Of a stretch of 64,000 nt of DNA, positions 12,901 to 55,213 are shown piece after piece; position 1 is the first letter of the stretch, and each line of letters begins with the position of its first letter. The stretch lies in contig NC_083409.1 in NCBI RefSeq assembly GCF_020745735.1, forward strand, positions 9,227,534 through 9,291,533. Reading direction: 5' to 3'. The translations under genes and the position numbers were made by a program. The stretch comes from Hemiscyllium ocellatum. Its lineage: Eukaryota. Under the pieces are notes generated by a model that was given only the letters and a program-made list of their open reading frames with translations, did not search any database and was not told the DNA's origin.

Positions 12901-13660
12901 AACAGACTAGTCCATTCTCTTTCCCACACCAAGGAGGAGATGGACAGATTATCCATCAATAATGATTAGGAGGTCATGGGGGGGTGGTCAGAATTGATCA
13001 AACAGATGATGGTTCCTGCAGTTGAATATCCTGCTGGCAGGCTCCAGCCTTTTACACACAGAATGGGGGAAGTATGTACGGTAGGGTGTATATTGTCGGG
13101 CTCCTTGTAATGATCCCTCAGCATCAAGTATCCCTCAGGAGAGGGGAGAGAATGTTTAGGGTCATGAGCTCCATTTCCCAGCCCAGGCAGTTTGTCTCCC
13201 AGTGAATGAATGAGATGCCAATTTGGAATCCAGGTTAGGACAGTCTCTGCTGTGGACCCAGGTCTACAAAAGGCAATTAGAGGTCGAGCTGAAAAGAAAA
13301 ATGATTTGCTGAGAGAGGGGCAGTGGGATTAATTGGATCACTCACAGACATGATGGGCTGAATGGTCTCCTCCTGTGCTAGGGGGAGCAGGTTTAGGACT
13401 GAATTGAGAAGGGACTTCTTCACCCAGAGGGTGGTAAATCTATGGAATTCCCTGCTCAGCGAAGTGGTTGAGGCTTCCTCAGTAAATGTTTTAAAGCTAA
13501 GACAGGTAATTTTTTGAACAGTAAATGAATTAAGCGTTATAGAGAGAGGGTGAGTAGTGGGAGGAGAGGCCATGAAAAGATCCGCCATGATCTTATTGAA
13601 TGGTGGAGTGGGCTTGAGGGGCCAGATTGCCTACTCCTGCTTCTAGTTCTTATGTTCTTA

Positions 13661-14015
13661 TGTGCTGTCAGATTCTGGGGAGTGCAGACCATTCACAGTT
13701 TTCTCCCGTCTCAGTAACAAACGTCCAGCTGCTCCGAGCTCCTTCTTTCACTTCCTCTCTTGGTGAAGTTTCAACCTTGCGATCTGACAGTCTTTGCAGT
13801 TATTTTTTACACTGGGGCTTTCTGCTGTGGTCAGAATCTCTAAAAATAAGTGTCCGATCAGTGACAATCACAGCAGCTAAGAGCAGTCAGGACTGAGGAG
13901 CCAGGCTCACTGGGAAACACATTGGGAAGATCAAAGCCATTCCTCTTCAGCTCCCGGTACAAACTCCATCCCTCTCCCTGAGCACCGTCTGCTGTTCAAC
14001 CAGACTCTTTACAGA
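13661..14015 (-). promoter_or_regulatory. Candidate upstream B-cell enhancer, cluster 1 (RUNX, EICE, E-box)
   Basis: TTTCACTTCC (GGAAGTGAAA on the gene strand) at 13746-13755, CAGCTG at 13726-13731, TGTGGT at 13826-13831; inverted homolog of 38324-38673. Confidence 0.6.
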
Positions 14016-16979
14016 AACAGGATACCTCAGCAGGTCTGGGCGCAGCTGGCGAAAGAAATCAGAGTTAACCTTTTGGGTCGAGTGACCCTTCCTCAGAACA
14101 GTTCTGAAGAATGTTCACGTGTCCCAAAATTTTAACTCTGCTTTCTCTCTGCAGATGGTGCCAGATCTGCCAAGCTTTTCCTGCAATTTCTGTTTTTGTT
14201 TCTCATTTATAACAACCACAGCTTTTTCAGCTTTTATTTAGTATGAGACTCCTTTCAATCTTGGCCTCATCTTTGAGGCTGATGTGAGCCCCAAACCCTC
14301 CACATCACAGAGATTACTCACTGAAAATCTCAGCGATTGCTTTGGGACCCCAAACATGATCATTCTAATGTTATCCTGGGACACATCACAGCCATGCCCA
14401 CTGTAAACTTCAGCTCATCCCAAACTCTGCTGCCTGTATCCAAACTCGCACCAAATCCCATCTACATCCCCCACCGTCCTCACTGAGCGACATTGGCTCC
14501 CAGTCCATCAACACCTCAATTTTCAAATCTTCCTCCTTGTTCTGAAGTCCCTCCCTGACCATCCACCCTCCCCATCTCTGTAACCTCCTCCCAGCTAGCT
14601 CAATCAGTGTGGTCAGCAATCTTGGATATATGGCTCTCTATTCCTTCATCCAAATCATTGAGAAATACTGTGGAATGCTAAAGTCCCAGGATGGATCCCT
14701 GGGCACTCCACTATTCACCTCTTGCTCTTTGGAGGACATAAACATTGTCCCTCAACTATGTCTCCTATCTCCAAACTAATTCCTAACACAAGGCAAATGT
14801 GTTTCCTACTTCAATATGTTTCCACGTTGATGAACAGCCTCTTAAACAGAGAAACTCGGAGCAGAAGTATGCCGTTCAGCCCTTCGAGCCTGTTCCACCA
14901 TTCAATATGATCATGGCTGATCAACCAACTCAGTTGCCTGTTCCTGCTTTCTCCCCATAACCTTTGATCCCTTTCATCCTGAGAAAAATATCGTGCCCTT
15001 TCTGGAAAATATCCAGTGATTTGGGCTCAACTGCTTTCAGTGACAGAAACTTCTACAGGCTTCCCACTCACTGAATGAAAACATTTCTCTCCATCTCAGC
15101 CCTAAATGTCCTTTCCTGTATCCTTAAACTGTAATCCTTGGTTCTGGACTCCCTCGTCATCAGGAACATCCTGCCTTGTCCTGTTACAATTTTAGAGTTT
15201 TCAATGTTAGTCCCCTCAATCTTCTAACCTTCAGTGAATATAATCCTAACTGATCCAGTTTCTCATCAGTGCTAATGTGCTAAGTGCTGTCATCCCAGGA
15301 ATCAGTCTGGTAAACCTTCGCTGCCCTCCCTCCACAGCCAGAACATCCTTCCTCAGATAAGGAGACCAAAACTGCACACAATACAATCATAAAATCACAC
15401 AGTACAGAAGAGGCCCTTCGGCCCATTCAACCTGTACCAGCCAAACTACGATAAACCTGCAATCATCCAACTTTCCAACACAAGGCCCATAGCGTTAAAT
15501 ATTATGATATGTCAAGGGTTCATCCAAGTACTTTTTAAAGGTAATCTCACTACCATCCCAGACAATGCAAACCAGACACCCACCACCCTCTGAGTGAAAA
15601 CCTGCTCTTCAAATCCCCTCTAAAGCCTTTCATAGTGAATGTGTGCCAACTCTGAGTAAGGGGAACACCTGCTTTCTATTCATTCAGTTCATTCCCCTCG
15701 TACCCTTATACATCTCTATCAGGTTCCCCTTTCAACTTCTCTGCTTCAGGAAAACAACCCGAGTTTATCCAGCCTATCTTCATCGCTGAAATGCTTCATC
15801 CCAAGCAACATCCTGGTGACTATCCTCTGCACCCCCTCCAGTACAATCCCATCCTTCCGATTGCGTGGTGACCAGAACTGCACACAGTACTCCAGCTGTG
15901 GCCTAACCAAAGTTCTGTACAGCTCCAACATATCCTCCCTGGTCTTCTCATCTGTACCTGAAATGATAAATGCAAGTGTCCCATATAACTTCATAAATAC
16001 CTTATTCATCTGTTACATCTTCCAAAGTTCATCACCTCACATTTATCAGGGGTAAGTTCCATCTGACTCTGATCTGCCTATCTGACCAATCCAGTTAGAT
16101 CCTCCTGTAACCTAAGACCTTCTTCCTCACTGTCAACCATCTGCCAAACCTCGTGCCATCTACAAACTCAGTCATCATCCACTCACCCCCACCCCTCACC
16201 TCTCACATTCTCATCTTCATTGTTTGAATATATCCTGAAAAATAAGGGACCCAGCACTGATCCCTGTGGTATCCCACTGCACACTGGACCCAGTCACAAA
16301 AACAAATTTCTGCCTCCACCCACTGTCTTCCGTCACTGAACCAGTTTTGGTTTGAATATTCCAGGTGTGGACTCACTAAGGCCCCATACAATTACAGCAA
16401 GACATCCCTGATCCTGTACTCAAATCCTCTCACTATAAAGGTAACATCTCATTTACCTTCTGCACTGCCTGCTGCACCTGCACGCTGACTTTCAGTGACT
16501 GGTATACACGGACACAGGCATCTCTGCATCTTCTTCACAGCTCCCCCTCCCACCCAGCTTTGTGTCATCTGCAAACTTGGAGATATTACTCTTAAGTTCC
16601 CTCATCTAAACCATGAACAAATACTGTGAATAGCTGGATCCAGGCCTGTGGTATCCTTTCAGAAAAGAGGTCAGTTTATTTTTACACTTTGTTTCCTGCC
16701 TGCCAACCAGTTCTCTATCCATGTCAGTACACTGCCCACAGTCCCAGGAGTCTTACTTTTATATGCTAATTTCTACTGTGGGAGTTAATAAAAGACTTCT
16801 GAATGTTCCAAATAAATCACATCCATTGTCGCCCTGTCAAATCCACTCATTACATCCTCAAACAATTCCAGTCAATTTGTTCTGCATGATTTCCCTTTCC
16901 ACAAATCATGCTGACTCTGTCTAATCCTATCACTGTCTTCCACGTGCTCAGTGATTAAATCTTTCAAAACGAACTTGTT

Positions 16980-35439: not shown

Positions 35440-37780
35440 TGATCTTGGGGTACTTGTCCACTGATCCCCGAATGTGGCAAGACAGGTTAACAGAGGACAC
35501 TTGCCTTGGTCATGGCAGGTATTGGTTATAAAAGCAGGAGGATATGCTGCAGTTAAGCAGAACATTGGTGAGGCCACAGCTGGAGTACTGTGTGCAGTTC
35601 AGGTCACCACACTGTAGGAAGGATGTGATTGCACTGGATGGGGTGCAGAGGGGAATCACCAGGATGTTGTGTGGGACGGAGCCTCTCAGTGATGAAGAGA
35701 AATTGGATCAGCTCGGTATGTTTTCTTCAGAGCACAGAAGGTGGAGGGGGACCTGATCGAAGTGTATAAGGTTATGAGAGGAATGGACAGGGAGGAGAGG
35801 AAGCAGCTGTTCTTCTTCATGGGAGGGTAATAAAAAGTTGGTTTACATTCATTGTGAAAGATAGGAAGTTTCAAGATGTTTTGAGGAAAATGTTTTTTTA
35901 GCCAGAGGGTGGTGGGTGTCTGGAACGCACAGCCTGGGAGAGCAGTTGACGTGAGAAAGCTCACAAACTTTAAAAAGTACTTGGGTGAGCAGTTGAAATG
36001 TCATAACATTCTAGCTATGGGCTCATATTGGAAAGTGGGATTGGTGCAGGTTTAGTGTAGTTTGGCTGGTACACAGTTAATGGGCTGAAGGGCCTGTTCT
36101 GTACTGTGTGATTTTGTGATTGTATTGTGTACAGTTTTGGTCTCCTTATCTGAGAAAGGATGTTCTGGTTGTGGAGGGAGGACAGCGAAAGTTTACCAGA
36201 CTGATTCCTGGGACGACAGCACTTAGATGTGTTGAGAAACTGGATCAGTTAGGATTATATTCACTGGAGGTTAGAAGATTGAGAGGAATCACGTTGGAAC
36301 CTTTAAAATCCTAACAGGACAAGACCGGAAAAACACAGGAAGTATGTTCCGGATCATTGGAGAATCCAGAACCAGGAATTACAGTTTAAAGAAAAGGGAA
36401 AAGTTATTTCAGACTGAGCTGAGGAGACATTTCTTTAGTCAGAGAGTGGGAAGCTCATGGAATATTCTATCACAGAAAGCAGTTGAGACCAAAACATTAA
36501 AAGTTGTCAAGAAGGAGATAGGTCTAAAGGGACTTAGGACGAAAGGGATTAAGGTTATGGGAAAAAAGTGGGAACAGGGGACTAAGTTGAATGATCAGCC
36601 ATGGTCATATTTAATGGCAGACCCCACTCGAAGGGCTGAATGGCCTACTCCTGCTGTTCGTTCCTTTGTTTCTGCTTTTGAGAGACTGTCCATAAACATG
36701 GAAACATATGGAATTATAGAGTCAAAGAGTCATCGAGTCCGACAGCACAGAGACAGGCTTTTTGGTCCACACTGGTCCATGCTGACCAAAATGTCCATCC
36801 ATGCTAACCCCATTTCCCTGCACTTGGCCCATATCCTTCGGAGCCTTTCCTATCCATGCATTTGTCCAAATGCCTTTTTAAAGTTGTTAATATACCCGCC
36901 TCAATCACTTCCACTGGCATATCATTCCATACGTGTGCCACCCTCTGTGTAAACAAGTTGTCCCTCAGGTTCCCTTTTATTCTTTCTCCTCTAACCTAAA
37001 ACCCCTCTCATCCTCAATTCCCCAACACTGGGAAAAAAGACTGAGTGCATTTACCCTATCCATGTCTCTCAAGGTCTTATACACTTCTAAAAAAAAAACC
37101 CTCAGTCTCCTACACTCTCCGAAAAAAGTCCTAGCTTGTCCAACTTCTCACAAAAACTCAGACTGTTGAGTCCTGGCAACATGCTTGTACATTTCCTCTG
37201 AACTCGTTCCAGTTTAATAATGTCCTTCCTATAACAAGGTGACCAAATACTCCAAGTGCGACTTCACCAATGTTCTGTACAATGGTAACATAACTTCTCA
37301 ACTTCTATACTCAATGCCCTGACTGATGAAGGCCAGTGTGTCAAAAGCCTTCCTCACTGCCCTGTCGAACTGTGACTCAACTTCCAGAGAACCGTGTACC
37401 TGAACTCCAAGATCTCTCTGTTTCACTACAGTCCTTAGGCCTTACCATTCACCATGGTACTCCCATCTCGATTAAACTTCCGAAAGTGCAAGACCTCACA
37501 ATTATCTCTCTGAACTCATTTTGTCGTTTCTCTGCCCATTTCTCCAGCTGATCAAGGTCCTGCTGCAATTTCTGATAACCTCCCTCAATGTCTACTGTAA
37601 TGTCATCTGCAAACTTACCAATCATGCCTTGCAGATTCTCATCCAAATTATTGATGTAGATAGCAAAGAGTAATGGAAACAGGACCGAGCCCTGAGGCAC
37701 TCCTCTAGACACAGGCCTCTAGTCTGACAAGCATCCTTCCACTGTTACCCACTGCTTCGTACCATCAAGCCAATCAAAGA
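35440..37780. mobile_element. Cluster of CR1-like 3' fragments (two plus-strand, one minus-strand)
   Basis: Repeated LVRPQLEYCVQFW-type peptides and tails; GKFADD motif at 37449-37712 on the minus strand. Confidence 0.75.
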
Positions 37781-38323
37781 AAAGTATTTGTCTTTGGTCA
37801 GGAATTAGTTTGGAGGTAGGAGGCAGAGAGGAAGAATAGTGAGTGCATCCTCCAGTGAGGAAGATGTGAATAGTGGTATCCCCAGGGATCTGTGCTGCGA
37901 GCTCAGCTTTTTAAGATATTTCTCAATGACTTGGATGAAGAAACAGAGAGCTGTACATCCAAGATTGCTGATCACACTGACTGAGGCAGCTTGGAGGAGG
38001 TTACAGAGATAGGGAGGGTGGAGGGCAGAGAGAGTTTTGCGAACAGGAATGAGAACTTGACAATCAAGGAGTTGCTGGAAAGGAGCCAATGTAGAAACAG
38101 GGTGCAGGGGGTTGGGGGAACAGGACTTGATGCAAGTTTGGATACAGGCATCAGAATTTGGAATGAACTGAAGGTTATGGAGGGCGATTGCTGTGATGTG
38201 TGCGAGCACAACATTGGAATGGTCATGTTTGGAGTCCCCAGACATGATTGAGATTTTCAGTGGCTGGTATGTATAATATGGAGAATATGGGGCTCAGATC
38301 ATTCTCAGAGATGTGGCCACATT

Positions 38324-38673
38324 TGTAAAGAGTCTGGTTGTGCAGCAGACCCCCAGGGAGAGGGATGGAGTTTAGACCAGGAGATGAAGAGGATGACTTT
38401 GATCTTCCCAATATGTTTCACAGTGAGTCCGGGCTTCTCAGTCCTGACTGCTCTTAGCTGCTGTGATTGTCACTGACTGGACACTTATTATTAGATATTC
38501 TGACCACAGCAGAAAGCCCCAGTGTAAAAAATAGTTGCAAAGGCTGTCAGAGCACAAGGTTGAAACTTCACCAAAAGAGGAAGTGAAAGAAGGAGCTCGG
38601 AGCAGCTGGGTGTTTGTTACTGATATGGGAGAAAACTGTGAACTGTCTGCTCTCCCTGGAACCTGACAGCACA
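38324..38673 (+). promoter_or_regulatory. Candidate upstream B-cell enhancer, cluster 2 (RUNX, EICE, E-box)
   Basis: ACCACA at 38503-38508, AAAAGA-GGAAGTGAAA with the EICE at 38579-38588, CAGCTG at 38603-38608; spacing identical to the cluster 1 copy. Confidence 0.6.
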
Positions 38674-40619
38674 GGAGGCGGGTCTGGGATTCTTCTTTTC
38701 AGAAACAGCACAGTGATGGAAAAAGTGTCAGTCACTCTCTCACAAACACACACGCCTGCACTTGGAGATTAGAAACAGAATCCAGCAGCAGCTCTTCTCC
38801 AAGCTGTGAAACCTGCACAGAATTGTTCCCTCATTCAGTTTTAACTGGCAGGATAGACTAAGCAGGGGAAGCAACACAGTTGTGTGTACAGTCAGAAGGG
38901 AGTTGCCCTGGGAGTGCTCACCATTAACTATGGAACACATGAAGCCTCATGACAGCAGGTCAAACATGGGGAAGGAAACCTCCTGCTGATTACCACATAG
39001 CACCGCCCTCCCCTCCAACCTCAACTGAGCAGTCAGTCCTCCTCCATGTTTGACAACACTTGGAGGGAGCATTGAGGGATGGAAGGACGCAGGATATACC
39101 CTGAGTAAGGGACTTCAAAGTCCACCATCAAGAGCTGCTCAGAATCATCACTACTGAGCAAGCTGGTCAGGTTCCACCTGATTCAGCTGCTAGACTGGAC
39201 CTGGGGCAGGTGGTGAGGGAACCAACAAGAGGGAACAACATACTCACTATCACCCTCACCAACCTGCCTGCTGCTGGTGTATCTGTCAATGACAGTATCA
39301 GTAAGGGTGACCACCGCACAGTCCGTGTGGAGACAAAATCCCATCTTCACATTCAAGTTACCTTACATTTTGTTGGGCAAGAGTTTCGGGATGTCAGGAA
39401 GAACTTTGTTTTGAACAGCAATTGGTAATGACTTGGAAATTAGTGCCATTTAGGTGAGGCAGGTGAAGAGACTCAGTGATTGCAATGGCAGATTGGATGG
39501 GCTCTTGATGGAAATAAACCTGCAAGGCTCTGGGGGTCGAGTAGGGATTGCTCCATGAAATGACAGCATTTCCCTGACAGGCTGAATGTTCTCCCCCTGT
39601 GCTGGAAATAGGTCTAACTCAATGAGGGGTTCACAATTAGAGAGTTTGGATGCAGTAAATACAGGACAAATTGTTTCTCCAGGCAGGAGGGTCAGTAACC
39701 AGAGGGCACACATTTCAGAAAGGGTCTGAAGAACAAGAGAGAAGATAGGAACATTTTTATCCAGCGAGTTTATGATGTCTGTCTGCAAGGTGAGTGGGAG
39801 TGGATTCAACAGCAACTTTCAAAAGGGCCTTTGGAGAAATAGCTGTAAAGGAAACAATTGCAGGGTTATACAGGAAGGGCTGGGTAAATGGGACTAATTG
39901 GACTAATTTGTCTAACTGTCACAATAGGCCCAATGACCTCTGTCTGTGCTGTATAAGAACTTACACACACTTAGTCTCACCTTTACACAAAGACTAGGAG
40001 AAACAGACAACCCAGTTTACAAAAGAATGCTTTCTCAAACACTCTTGAACCAACTCAGGGAACAGGCCCAGACTAGATTTACTAGAGTAAGTCAGCAAAT
40101 CAATGACAAGGGAACAGTAAACCAAAAGCAATGGGACTGAACAATATATTCAGTAACACAACAATCGAGAGGAGGAGGGATGAAGGGCAGGAGGTCAGAG
40201 AGCATGCTGTAGGGGCCTGAAGGCTCTGCTGTCAATGGTGGGATGGAGGAAGCAGCAATGGACAGGAGACTAGAGACAGAAGATGGAAAGGGGAGGAAGG
40301 GAATGGAAGCAGCAGGACACAGATTGAGGGAGGAGGGAGGCCATGGAGGCAATTGGTTGGCAGTGAGCTCATTCTTGAACGACTTCAGATGTCAGACAAG
40401 GAAGGGACCACTCCATATCAGACAAGTTGGGGTTTATGGAATGTGACTTCAGGAAGCTGGGAGAGGACATTAGAATCAATAGTTAGGACAAGCAGGAATT
40501 AGTGTTTCTGTGGCCAGGGGACTGAAGTCGTGCAGAGACAGACAGTGTTGTTGAGACTGAAATAAGGGACCTTCATGATGGAGTGGATTTTGGGTTTGCA
40601 GCTCAAGTACTGGACAGTC

Positions 40620-44228: not shown

Positions 44229-44321
44229 AAGTGTGAGGGGCTGACGTGGCTCTCTCTGCCTGATGCCATTTACACACTGAGGAACACCCAGTCAGACTCT
44301 CACAGGCTGCTGCTTTATAAA
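44221..44321 (+). promoter_or_regulatory. V promoter, cluster 2, with destroyed octamer
   Basis: GAGGAAGTG Ets site (44224-44232) and TATAAA (44316-44321) retained; octamer position reads ATTTACAC (44268-44275) instead of ATTTGCAT. Confidence 0.85.
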
Positions 44322-44381
44322 GCAGAGCCCAATGAAGGGAGAGTTTATCAGGAACCAGGCACAGGGACAGGAGCACACACC

Positions 44382-44430
44382 ATGATTTCACACATCCAGC
44401 TGATCTGGCCCCTGGCATTCTGTGTCGCAG
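44382..44430 (+). pseudogene. IGKV: Leader exon of cluster 2 kappa light-chain pseudogene
   Basis: Same peptide as the cluster 1 leader (one synonymous difference); GT donor at 44431; 186-nt intron to an AG at 44615-44616. Confidence 0.93.
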
Positions 44431-44616
44431 GTACAAATCTCTCTCCTTCCACCTTGAATCTTTAGCTGCTCTCCATTTCACTCCAGTTCCACTGACTTGT
44501 GATTGAAGGGAAAATGCTGAAACCAGAGGAATGCTCAGTGTCTCCAACAATCTCTCATTTGATCGGCTCTTTCTGTGAAAGTTCTGACTTCACTGTGTTT
44601 CTCTCTGATCCCTCAG

Positions 44617-44935
44617 GTATCGGTGAGGACATCATCATGACCTAGTCTCCCCCACTGCTGTCAGTGGGACTGGGCCAGACTGCAACCATCACCTGTAGGG
44701 CCATTAGCAGCTACCTTGCTTGGTACCACTAGCGAGAAGGTCAGAAACCCTCTCTCCTGATCTATGCTGCAGCAACTCAACTCACAGGAATCTCCGAGTG
44801 ATTCACCGGCAGTGGATCAGGGACCAGTTTCACCCTGACAATCAGCAACGTTCATAATGAGGATGTCGCTGACTGTTACTGTCAGCAGCATTACAGCTGG
44901 CCTTACTTTCGGTAAAGGAACCAAGCTCAGACTGA
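44617..44935 (+). pseudogene. IGKV: Germline-joined VJ exon, cluster 2, pseudogenised
   Basis: DIIMT*SPP...CRAISSYLAWYH*RE...[15 protein letters not shown]...[11 protein letters not shown] fused to [10 protein letters not shown]. Stops at 44643-45 (TAG), 44730-32 (TAG), 44799-801 (TGA). CDR1 is 9 nt shorter than in cluster 1. Junction is +1 out of frame. Donor reads GGAAGT (44936) instead of GTAAGT. Confidence 0.95.
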
Positions 44936-53570: not shown

Positions 53571-54884
53571 AAAGAAAAACTGTTTATCCCATGTGTCTTC
53601 TGAACCACCTCACTGACCTGCATTCATTAATCACCATGGCCACATCTTCCAGCTCCACACACATCTGACTTCCAGCCTCAAGCTGACGACAAACATTCCT
53701 TCATTATCTGAGAAACGGACAGAAACATCAAACACAGGAGCAGCAGTAGGCCATTCGGCCCCTCAAGCCTGCTCCACCATTCAATATGATCATGGCCGAT
53801 CATCCAACACTGTCCCCTGTTCCTGCTCGCTCCCCACATTCTTTGAACTCATTAATCTTAAGAACTGTATCTAATTCCTTCTTGAACACATACCGCATTT
53901 AATTCTCTCATGCTGGTAAATTGATGAGAAGTATTGAGTTGTTTTTTGACACAATGATCCGTTGGGCCTTTTGGGTCTCTCTGACTCTGACTCTATTATT
54001 ATATATTATGAATAACTGGGTACCAAGGACTGATCCCTGTGGTACCCCAACTGGTAAATATCTGCCATTCAGAAAAAAGACTCGCCCTTCCTGTCCTGTC
54101 TGCCAAACAGTTCTCAATCCATGTCAGTACCTGACCCCCATACTCTTGTTTGTTGGGATTTCTTTGATTCAGTTGGACACAGTTAATCCTGTCTTTGCCT
54201 TCCTCAGGTCCTGTTCAATGTCACCCCTGCATTTTCGATCCTCCTCTGGGCTTTCTGCAGATAACTCCAGATAACCAACATCACCTTCCCTGTTTAATCT
54301 TCCCTACTCTGGCTGCCTTTTGACATCCCAGGCTGAGAGTCTAGATTTGGGAGTCCCACCCTTACTCATTGTGGGAAAAGATTCTGAACAATCTCTGTCT
54401 TTTCTTTTGAGGGATCCCACTGCCCTGGCATTGATTTCACATGATGGCGTTGGTTCCAGTCCACTTTTACTAAATCATCGCACAGTTTAGTAAAATAATT
54501 CATTCCCAAGTGAAAACGTTAACACTTGCTCCATGGTTCTCCATTTCCATCCCTACTCTCAATCTCACTGAGTTCTGGTCACTGTCACTAAACTTATCCC
54601 CCATTGAGAACTCTTCCAACTGCCCACATTCATTCCCTAAACAAGGGTCCAAACTTGTTCCTTGTCTTTCCCCATCACCTTCTCTGGGAAATTAGGGATG
54701 AGAAATAAATGCTGGCTCTGCTAGTGACACTCACTCCCAAGAAGCAATTTAAACAATACCTGTTCTTTTTTGTCGGGATTGGTAGGTATTGTATACAAAT
54801 GTTCAAACATTGTACCAGTGAATGTTCTGAGAGTTGAAGTTTCTTCAAAAGGCAGGGATTAAAATTGTTTCTCTTGTCTTTCTG

Positions 54885-55213
54885 GCCGTGAGAACTCTCA
54901 GCCCAAGCTGACCCTGCTGCCCCCCTCCCCGGAGCAGGTCAATGCCAAGGGCACTGCCACCCTGGTGTGCCTTGCCAATCACTTCTATCCCGATGAGCTG
55001 GAGGTGCAGTGGAAGAAGGATGGTGCAGTCATTTCGGACGGGGTTCAGACCAGCAACTACCTGCGAGCTTCGGACAGCACCTACAGTGTCAGCAGCCTGC
55101 TGACCCTCTCTGGGTCTGACTGGGAGTCCAACGCTCGCTTCTCCTGTGCCCTCACCCACGTGACCCTCCCCTCTCCCCTCAGCAAGACCATCAGAAGATC
55201 AGAATGTGTGTAG
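54885..55213 (+). CDS. IGKC: Ig kappa-type (NS4-like) light-chain constant exon; ORF intact but splice acceptor reads TG
   Basis: (S)RENSQPKLTLLPPSPEQVNAKGTATLVCLANHFYPDELEVQWKKDG...FSCALTHVTLPSPLSKTIRRSECV*: C1-set Cys/Trp/Cys plus terminal interchain Cys. A polypyrimidine tract precedes TTTCTG|GCCGT, so AG is absent at 54883-54884. Confidence 0.93.

What the first reader, a model, noticed from the sequence alone, without database searches (positions are those of the whole stretch)
13661..14015. Candidate cluster-autonomous upstream enhancer of shark kappa genes: EICE + E-box + RUNX with invariant spacing
Seen: about 8.2 kb upstream of V1 and 5.8 kb upstream of V2 (38324-38673), in the same orientation relative to each gene, lies a roughly 350-bp block. 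The 30 nt GGAAGTGAAAGAAGGAGCTCGGAGCAGCTG are identical in both. RUNX (ACCACA) sits 70 nt before the EICE and the E-box 14 nt after it in both copies. The RUNX-EICE spacer differs at 6 of 70 nt, while adjacent LINE-derived flank is only about 80% identical by eye. Known: GGAAnnGAAA is the PU.1/Spi-B-IRF4/8 composite element of mammalian kappa 3' and lambda enhancers (the lambda-B core is GGAAGTGAAA), acting with E2A E-boxes. Inference: each shark cluster has its own B-cell enhancer 5' of V rather than 3' of C, which could explain cluster-autonomous activation. I am not aware of such an element being described.
Basis: partly seen in the sequence, partly recalled or inferred. Interest (0 to 1): 0.82.

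Follow-up and report, generated by a model that had tools for sequence, protein, structure and literature searches.

The report
Conserved upstream module of shark kappa clusters
A 350-base non-coding block lies a few kilobases upstream of shark antibody kappa light-chain genes, is kept far better than its surroundings, and carries the binding-site set of mammalian light-chain enhancers, so it is a credible but untested candidate for the first antibody-gene enhancer in cartilaginous fish.

Summary
Blocks 13661-14013 (-) and 38324-38673 (+) are 89.3% identical (316/354). They occur only twice in the window. Each lies 8.1 or 5.7 kb 5' of a kappa VJ gene, in that gene's orientation, inside a large inverted segmental duplication whose other non-coding parts are 75-81% identical. 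EICE, E-box and RUNX sites and their spacings are as described.

The 30-nt identical run is not evidence by itself: at 89% identity such a run is expected (P=0.75).

Stronger evidence comes from Chiloscyllium punctatum kappa loci that I fetched. The counterpart of cluster 1 has the block 6.4 kb 5' of V at 96.0% identity, against 87.0% background (p=3e-8). A distant paralogous cluster with a full V-J-C gene model has it 4.7 kb 5' of V. CAGCTG and its 14-nt distance from the EICE are invariant in all five copies.

The copy beside the dead V2 gene took 22 lineage-specific changes against 7 for the other copy. There is no RNA-family match, RNA structure or coding signal.

Caveats:
- One pseudogene cluster lacks the block in assembled sequence.
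- Both local VJ genes are defective.
- No chromatin or expression data exist.
- RUNX spacing is not invariant.

Seventeen other first-reader notes in this genome describe the same module near other kappa genes. Verdict: a selected cis-regulatory module, probably a B-cell enhancer, with function untested.

The parts
13661..14013 (-). Block copy 1, 8.1 kb 5' of the V1 leader. It is bounded by later transposon insertions (LINE tail 13379-13657, SINE-like 14014-14245).
   Evidence: It is 96.0% identical to the C. punctatum counterpart L002 3268-3615.
38324..38673 (+). Block copy 2, 5.7 kb 5' of the V2 pseudogene leader.
   Evidence: It shows 22 lineage-specific changes against 7 in copy 1.
38437..38642 (+). 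Best-conserved core of the module across four paralogous lineages.
   Evidence: Identical runs of 40, 37 and 34 nt. 13-16 of 20 columns are invariant in sliding windows. The BLAST core against L001a is 82.8% over query positions 117-337.
38579..38588 (+). EICE GGAAGTGAAA (copy 1: 13746-13755 on the minus strand), identical to the mouse lambda-B core.
   Evidence: Intact in 4 of 5 copies; L001b reads GGAAATGAAG.
38603..38608 (+). E-box CAGCTG, 14 nt 3' of the EICE (copy 1: 13726-13731).
   Evidence: Sequence and spacing are invariant in all 5 copies.
38503..38508 (+). RUNX-type site ACCACA (copy 1: 13826-13831).
   Evidence: Intact in 4 of 5 copies; L001b reads ACCAGA. Spacing to the EICE is 70, 70, 70, 68 and 78 nt.
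38511..38520 (-). kappaB-like site GGGGCTTTCT, read on the minus strand (copy 1: 13814-13823).
   Evidence: Consensus scan; present in 4 of 5 copies and in the best-conserved 40 nt.
38485..38494 (+). MEF2-consensus site TTATTATTAG (copy 1: 13840-13849, TTATTTTTAG).
   Evidence: Consensus scan; present in 3 of 5 copies. It accounts for 2 of only 4 such sites in the 64-kb window.
5020..5695 (-). V1 gene: octamer (5688-5695 on the plus strand), leader, and germline-joined VJ with the V and J frames offset by one base.
44270..44930 (+). V2 gene: mutated octamer (ATTTACAC), leader, and germline-joined VJ pseudogene with three in-frame stops.
54863..55210 (+). Open kappa C-domain exon (ORF span), 9.9 kb 3' of V2J2.
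   Evidence: It is 96% identical to the L005 C exon.
36717..37785 (-). LINE fragment inserted in cluster 2 after the duplication. It separates two ancestral flank pieces.
   Evidence: The collinearity break 14798/14807 against 37786/36716; reverse-transcriptase ORFs.

Best explanation
The block is a conserved non-coding module that belongs to the repeating unit of shark Ig kappa clusters. It sits 4.7-8.1 kb 5' of the V leader and points the same way as V. The most likely reading is a B-lineage cis-regulatory module of the enhancer type. In this model an Ets factor of the PU.1/Spi-B group binds with IRF4/8 at the EICE, and an E-protein binds CAGCTG 14 nt away. RUNX, an NF-kappaB-like site and a MEF2 site 60-95 nt upstream would add input. 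The assembled complex would act on the octamer-bearing V promoter of its own cluster, opening it for transcription and, in split clusters, for RAG. Shown here: the element's presence, its linkage to kappa clusters in two species, conservation above background, faster decay beside a dead V gene, motif content, and the absence of coding or structured-RNA signal. Inferred: factor binding, enhancer activity, B-cell specificity and action restricted to one cluster.
For: 1. Across species, the block is 96.0% identical (337/351) against 87.0% for 11,193 background columns (Fisher p=3e-8). It is the second-best 353-column window in 15 kb, after the V promoter/leader at 97.2%.
2. Among paralogs, the block is 89% identical against 75-81% for collinear non-coding pieces and 84% for the piece holding the VJ genes. 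Against the distant clusters L001a and L001b the core is 75-83% identical, against 67-73% for the flanks.
3. All recovered copies lie in kappa-cluster DNA, with fixed orientation and similar distance to V.
4. W_copy1 is closer to L002 (96%) than to W_copy2 (90%). This is slow evolution, not within-genome homogenisation.
5. Polarised substitutions number 22 on the lineage beside the V2 pseudogene and 7 beside V1.
6. The EICE-plus-CAGCTG composite occurs only in the blocks, with 0 hits in shuffles. The two blocks are the only 350-bp windows in 64 kb with 8 of 10 lymphoid motif types, and the same is true in L002.
7. The EICE equals the lambda-B core. Mammalian 3'E-kappa and Ed bind PU.1, IRF and E2A (review PMC13639285).
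8. There is no Rfam match, RNA folding z-scores are +0.5 and -0.05, and 1-nt indels among the copies argue against coding.
Against: There are no chromatin, transcript or reporter data, and no RNA run was shown to hold the block. Conservation is spread over about 200 bp, and the EICE/E-box segment is not its single peak. The most divergent copy (L001b) has a degenerate EICE and RUNX site. L005, the counterpart of cluster 2, lacks the block in its assembled upstream sequence, although its V is a pseudogene and a satellite array with an N gap lies there. Both VJ genes next to the window's blocks are defective, yet copy 2 keeps all the motifs. The motif list was partly chosen after seeing the block. 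Summed read depth over the block is 4-8 times that of the flanks, so copies outside kappa clusters cannot be excluded. EICEs also serve myeloid and dendritic-cell enhancers.
Confidence: 0.5

Rival explanations
1. The block is a selected regulatory element of another type. It could be the promoter of an upstream sterile or non-coding transcript, a silencer, or a boundary element placed between head-to-head clusters.
For: The same conservation and linkage evidence applies. In the window and in L001 the blocks face each other between two inverted clusters, 24 kb and 3.7 kb apart. A/T-rich TATA-like stretches lie in the core.
Against: No CTCF-like core was seen when reading the sequence. No RNA run holds the block. 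Reviews state that shark Ig promoters appear to be associated only with V segments (PMC5192425). The motif set is that of activating lymphoid enhancers.
Confidence: 0.2
2. The block is a functionless passenger of the cluster repeat unit. It would be an old transposon piece or ordinary spacer that looks conserved because of gene conversion, a local mutation cold spot, or chance, and the motifs would be coincidental.
For: It is co-duplicated with the clusters, so linkage alone proves nothing. The 30-nt identical run is expected by chance. Depth over the block is 4-8 times that of the flanks in three runs. The block is retained next to a dead V2. L005 lacks it.
Against: Gene conversion cannot explain 96% against 87% between species, nor why the cross-species counterparts group together. 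The threefold asymmetry of change between the two copies argues against a cold spot. Homology to L001a and L001b runs on into the flanks, so no transposon termini coincide with the block. No transposon ORF or further copy exists in the window. The EICE-plus-E-box composite and the count of 8 of 10 motif types are unique in 64 kb.
Confidence: 0.17
3. The block is an unannotated exon or a small non-coding RNA gene carried by each cluster.
For: It is conserved at about the level of the V leader region. Short ORFs overlap it.
Against: One-nucleotide indels among the copies and no conserved frame. No Rfam match at E<=1. Folding is no better than for shuffled sequence on either strand. No RNA contigs hold it.
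Confidence: 0.05

Closest known systems
Mouse and human Ig lambda enhancers (E-lambda2-4, E-lambda3-1) with the lambda-B PU.1/IRF4 composite site
   Same: The EICE core GGAAGTGAAA is identical (lambda-B sequence in PMC4872103). An E-box lies nearby and a MEF2-consensus site sits upstream. From my own knowledge, lambda-A is a MEF2 site. The elements serve a light-chain gene.
   Different: The mammalian elements lie 3' of the C genes, whereas this block is 5' of V. No sequence homology beyond the motifs was tested. Here there appears to be one element per small V-J-C cluster. Activity is untested.
Mammalian Ig kappa 3' enhancer (3'E-kappa) and Ed
   Same: These are kappa-locus elements bound by PU.1, IRF4 and E2A (PMC13639285), that is, the same EICE-plus-E-box logic.
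   Different: They lie downstream of C-kappa in a translocon locus and serve many V genes. Their EICE reads GGAACTGAAA (from my own knowledge). This block is upstream of V and repeated with each cluster.
Ordinary lineage-specific conserved non-coding elements found by phylogenetic footprinting
   Same: The block was detected the same way: a peak of identity in orthologous and paralogous alignments with no coding or RNA signal.
   Different: It is a multi-copy element that travels with a tandemly and invertedly duplicated immune gene family. Conservation has so far been shown only within orectolobiform sharks.

Membership tests
EICE-dependent Ig light-chain enhancers (3'E-kappa, E-lambda type) | An Ets-IRF composite element GGAANNGAAA | tested here: met
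   GGAAGTGAAA at 38579-38588 and 13746-13755. It is intact in 4 of 5 copies and equals the lambda-B core.
EICE-dependent Ig light-chain enhancers (3'E-kappa, E-lambda type) | A nearby E-protein (E2A) site | tested here: met
   CAGCTG lies 14 nt 3' of the EICE. Sequence and spacing are invariant in 5 of 5 copies. This is a sequence-level test only.
EICE-dependent Ig light-chain enhancers (3'E-kappa, E-lambda type) | Cooperative binding of PU.1/Spi-B with IRF4/8 | not testable with these tools
   This needs EMSA, ChIP or CUT&RUN with shark factors.
EICE-dependent Ig light-chain enhancers (3'E-kappa, E-lambda type) | B-cell-specific, position-independent activation of an Ig promoter | not testable with these tools
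   No reporter or chromatin data are available. No RNA run holds the block.
EICE-dependent Ig light-chain enhancers (3'E-kappa, E-lambda type) | Location 3' of the C gene | tested here: not met
   The block is 4.7-8.1 kb 5' of V in all four cases where V is in view.
Conserved non-coding element under purifying selection | Identity above the neutral background between species | tested here: met
   96.0% against 87.0%, Fisher p=3e-8. It is the second-best window in 15 kb.
Conserved non-coding element under purifying selection | No coding frame and no structured RNA | tested here: met
   One-nucleotide indels; Rfam gives no match; folding z-scores are +0.5 and -0.05.
Conserved non-coding element under purifying selection | Relaxed constraint when the target is lost | tested here: inconclusive
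   22 changes against 7 beside the dead V2 compared with V1. This is a single pair, and V1 is itself out of frame in this genome.
Dispersed transposable element | Many copies unlinked to a host gene family | tested here: inconclusive
   5 of 5 recovered copies are in kappa clusters. Summed depth is 4-8 times that of the flanks, but depth is not a copy number, and an 80% threshold recruits more paralogs for a better-conserved piece.
Dispersed transposable element | Defined termini, target-site duplications or transposon ORFs | tested here: not met
   Homology to the paralogs runs through both block edges. The edges in copy 1 are set by other transposon insertions. There is no transposon ORF.

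The most novel reading that the evidence does not exclude
This is the first Ig enhancer of a cartilaginous fish: a module with the same kinds of sites as mammalian lambda enhancers (MEF2, RUNX, kappaB-like, EICE identical to lambda-B, E-box), carried once per kappa cluster and placed 5' of V. That would mean the PU.1/IRF-E2A light-chain enhancer logic predates the split of cartilaginous and bony vertebrates. It would also mean each shark cluster owns a private switch, giving a physical basis for cluster-by-cluster (stochastic) activation and light-chain exclusion.
Probability: 0.4. Interest if true: 0.8.

Novelty: new variant of a known kind. Interest (0 to 1): 0.6.

Why it matters
Sharks carry tens of separate V-J-C light-chain clusters; about 50-60 kappa genes are estimated in nurse shark (PMC2193156, PMC5192425). 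How a B cell activates only a few of them is an open question. The proposal for heavy chains is rare formation of a promoter-enhancer complex under limiting factors (PMC2435157). However, my full-text searches found no enhancer described for any cartilaginous-fish Ig cluster. A defined core of about 200 bp, with a lambda-B-identical EICE and an E-box at a fixed distance, gives that model a concrete and mutable target. It can be tested by ATAC-seq, CUT&RUN and reporter assays. It also allows a test of whether the mammalian light-chain enhancer code is ancestral to jawed vertebrates.

Tried and rejected
1. Chromosome-level shark assemblies (Hemiscyllium, Cetorhinus, Heterodontus, Scyliorhinus, new C. 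punctatum) could not be read: the file or the gene range was too large. Only five C. punctatum draft contigs were usable, and two of them (L003, L004) have under 3 kb upstream of V.
2. Copy number from read depth is ambiguous. Block depth is 4-8 times flank depth, but the whole region is multi-copy and the 80% cut-off favours conserved pieces.
3. RNA evidence: no RNA run holds the block. Runs X1-X4, of unknown kind, show the same depth profile as DNA run X6, so I treat them as DNA.
4. Structured RNA and known RNA families are rejected.
5. An exon reading is rejected because of 1-nt indels.
6. A CTCF-type insulator was considered; only a poor match was seen when reading the sequence, and no matrix scan was available.
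7. An EBF site is present in copy 2 only, so it is not conserved.
8. The '30 identical nt' argument is rejected as evidence of motif-specific constraint.
9. Gene conversion as the cause of the high identity is rejected because of the cross-species grouping.
10. I looked for other host genes between the two blocks (16-35.5 kb) and found only transposon-like ORFs.

Full report
**Anatomy of the window**

The window holds two kappa-type light-chain V genes in opposite orientation.
- V1 (minus strand, about 5020-5695) has an intact octamer, a leader and a germline-joined VJ whose V and J frames are offset by one base.
- V2 (plus strand, about 44270-44930) is a germline-joined VJ with three in-frame stops and a mutated octamer.
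- The only C-domain exon is at 54863-55210 (+), 9.9 kb 3' of V2J2. The C exon of V1 would lie beyond the window's start.

Self-BLAST shows that the two genes sit in a large inverted segmental duplication with these collinear pieces:

| Piece in arm 1 | Piece in arm 2 | Identity |
|---|---|---|
| 17-1765 | 48842-47078 | 78% |
| 4039-5751 (holds the VJ genes) | 45899-44212 | 84% |
| 6851-7235 | 42739-42340 | 80.5% |
| 13661-14013 (the block) | 38673-38324 | 89.3% |
| 14246-14798 | 38335-37786 | 75% |
| 14807-15981 | 36716-35495 | 74.7% |

Later transposon insertions explain the unequal distances. A LINE tail (13379-13657) and a SINE-like piece (14014-14245) were inserted in arm 1, and a LINE (36717-37785) in arm 2. 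ORFs between the two blocks look transposon-derived only.

**Check of the observation**

Every stated detail holds: coordinates, orientation, the identical 30 nt, the 70-nt and 14-nt spacings, and the 6 of 70 spacer differences. The flank is 75% identical rather than about 80%.

The identical 30 nt are not significant in themselves. With 38 differences in 354 columns, a run of at least 30 occurs in 75% of permutations, and two longer runs (40 and 37 nt) lie elsewhere in the block.

What exceeds chance is the block as a whole. It is the best-kept piece of the duplicated unit, better than the piece holding the VJ genes. The composite GGAANNGAAA-N(0-30)-CAGCTG occurs nowhere else in 64 kb and in none of 100 shuffles. 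The EICE pattern alone is not enriched (6 hits against 4.3 expected).

**Related loci**

The V1 ORF finds kappa chains of orectolobiform and other sharks. The best hits are from Chiloscyllium punctatum, at 87%. Chromosome-level assemblies could not be read, but five C. punctatum draft contigs could.
- **L002** is collinear with cluster 1 over 15 kb and shares its transposon insertions, so it is an ortholog or a very close counterpart. The block lies at L002 3268-3615, 6.4 kb 5' of V in the same orientation.
- **L001** carries a full V-J-C gene model (P0022). It has one block copy 4.7 kb 5' of V in the same orientation (L001a). A second, inverted copy lies 3.7 kb further up (L001b), presumably facing a neighbouring inverted cluster. 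This mirrors the head-to-head layout in the window.
- **L003 and L004** have under 3 kb of upstream sequence and cannot be scored.
- **L005** is collinear with cluster 2 from window position 38788 onward, which is 115 bp past the block. A transposon, a LINE, a satellite array and an N gap lie upstream of that point, and the block is not found. Its V is a pseudogene: mutated octamer, a frameshift and a CDR1-FR2 deletion.

Five block copies in about 160 kb of kappa DNA would not be expected from a repeat scattered at random, even one with a few hundred genomic copies. That argument is inference, not a measurement.

**Conservation**

In the global alignment of cluster 1 with L002, the block is 96.0% identical (337/351). 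The 11,193 background columns are 87.0% identical (Fisher p=3e-8). Among all 353-column windows (mean 87.6%, sd 3.5%), only the V promoter/leader/FR1 window is higher, at 97.2%.

Copy 1 is closer to L002 (96%) than to copy 2 (90%). The high identity is therefore slow change, not homogenisation within a genome. Against the distant paralogs L001a and L001b the block is 75-78% identical, with a core at 83%, while the flanks are 67-73%.

Using L001a and L001b as outgroups, 22 differences fall on the copy-2 lineage (beside the dead V2) and 7 on the copy-1 lineage; 9 are ambiguous. At several of those positions the other genomic copies seen in reads carry the inferred ancestral base. This fits relaxed constraint after the neighbouring gene died. 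It rests on one pair only.

**Content of the block**

Across the five copies:
- CAGCTG and its 14-nt distance from the EICE are invariant.
- The EICE and RUNX sites are intact in four copies. L001b reads GGAAATGAAG and ACCAGA.
- RUNX-EICE spacing is 70, 70, 70, 68 and 78 nt, so it is not invariant.

Conservation forms a plateau from about 38437 to 38642. The highest stretch covers RUNX and an adjacent kappaB-like site (GGGGCTTTCT on the minus strand). The EICE/E-box region comes close behind.

A consensus scan also finds a MEF2 site (38485), an Ikaros/CCAAT overlap (38405) and a MYB site that copy 2 has lost. The two blocks are the only 350-bp windows in the 64 kb with 8 of 10 lymphoid motif types; windows that do not overlap the blocks reach 5 at most. 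The block is likewise the top window in L002. The motif list was partly assembled after seeing the block, so this result is descriptive.

The EICE equals the lambda-B core. Mammalian 3'E-kappa and Ed bind PU.1, IRF and E2A.

**Other readings tested**

There is no Rfam match at E<=1. RNA folding is no better than for shuffled sequence on either strand. One-nucleotide indels rule out a coding exon. No RNA run holds the block.

Read laying shows that the whole 37.8-40.5 kb region is multi-copy in the source species and in a relative. Summed depth over the block is 4-8 times that of the non-LINE flanks. The tool warns that this is not a copy number. At an 80% cut-off a better-conserved segment also recruits more paralogous clusters. 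The result therefore fits 'one block per kappa cluster' but does not exclude further copies elsewhere. A contig from a second species spans flank plus block (record 28). Four other organism labels share 9-18% of the block's sampled 31-mers.

**Literature and earlier notes**

Full-text searches found no enhancer described for any cartilaginous-fish Ig cluster. A review states that shark Ig promoters appear associated only with V segments and gives about 60 kappa genes in nurse shark. An earlier paper estimates about 50, of which roughly 10% are germline-joined.

Seventeen other first-reader notes in this same genome describe the same EICE/E-box/RUNX module about 5 kb 5' of other kappa V genes, on this chromosome and on other pieces. 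These notes are unchecked and are not independent proof. They agree with what I verified in C. punctatum.

**Verdict**

The block is a selected non-coding module of the kappa cluster unit. The enhancer reading is the best-supported mechanism (about 0.5), and other regulatory roles come next. Function, factor binding and cluster autonomy remain inferences. The claim that sharks use this element instead of a 3' enhancer is not established.

Noticed in passing
window 5045-5047 and 44897-44902; L002 10535-11221; L005 14799-15322: Both VJ genes in the window are germline-joined. Their collinear C. punctatum counterparts are split, with about 686 bp and 520 bp between V and J. The joins are precise excisions of the V-J spacer. 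This implies either two separate germline joining events or transfer of a joined VJ between clusters.
   Followed up: partly
window 44270-44930; L005 14127-14799: V2 and its C. punctatum counterpart both carry a G-to-A change in the promoter octamer (ATTTACAC and ATTTACAT), and both are pseudogenes. This cluster may have been dead before the species split.
   Followed up: partly
L005 1142-5543: A large tandem, satellite-like array interrupted by an 884-bp N gap lies upstream of a kappa cluster, exactly where the conserved block would be expected. It may reflect a rearrangement or an assembly problem.
   Followed up: no
L002 8229; L004 764: A second EICE-type motif (GGAAGGGAAAT, in a shared context) recurs 1.8-1.9 kb 5' of V in two C. 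punctatum kappa contigs. It is absent at the matching place in the window.
   Followed up: no
window 14014-14245: A roughly 232-bp SINE-like insertion with an internal self-complementary stretch (14030-14170) is present in cluster 1 and in L002 but not in cluster 2. It dates the insertion to after the cluster duplication and before the two species diverged.
   Followed up: partly
window 37700-40500: Read-contig depth suggests that even the parts of this stretch that are unique within the window exist in tens of near-identical copies in the source species and in a relative. This fits a recently amplified family of kappa clusters.
   Followed up: partly
window 4453-4806: The segment just 3' of J1 is the third-best conserved window against L002 (93.5% against a mean of 87.6%). 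It is a weak candidate for a second, intronic regulatory island.
   Followed up: no
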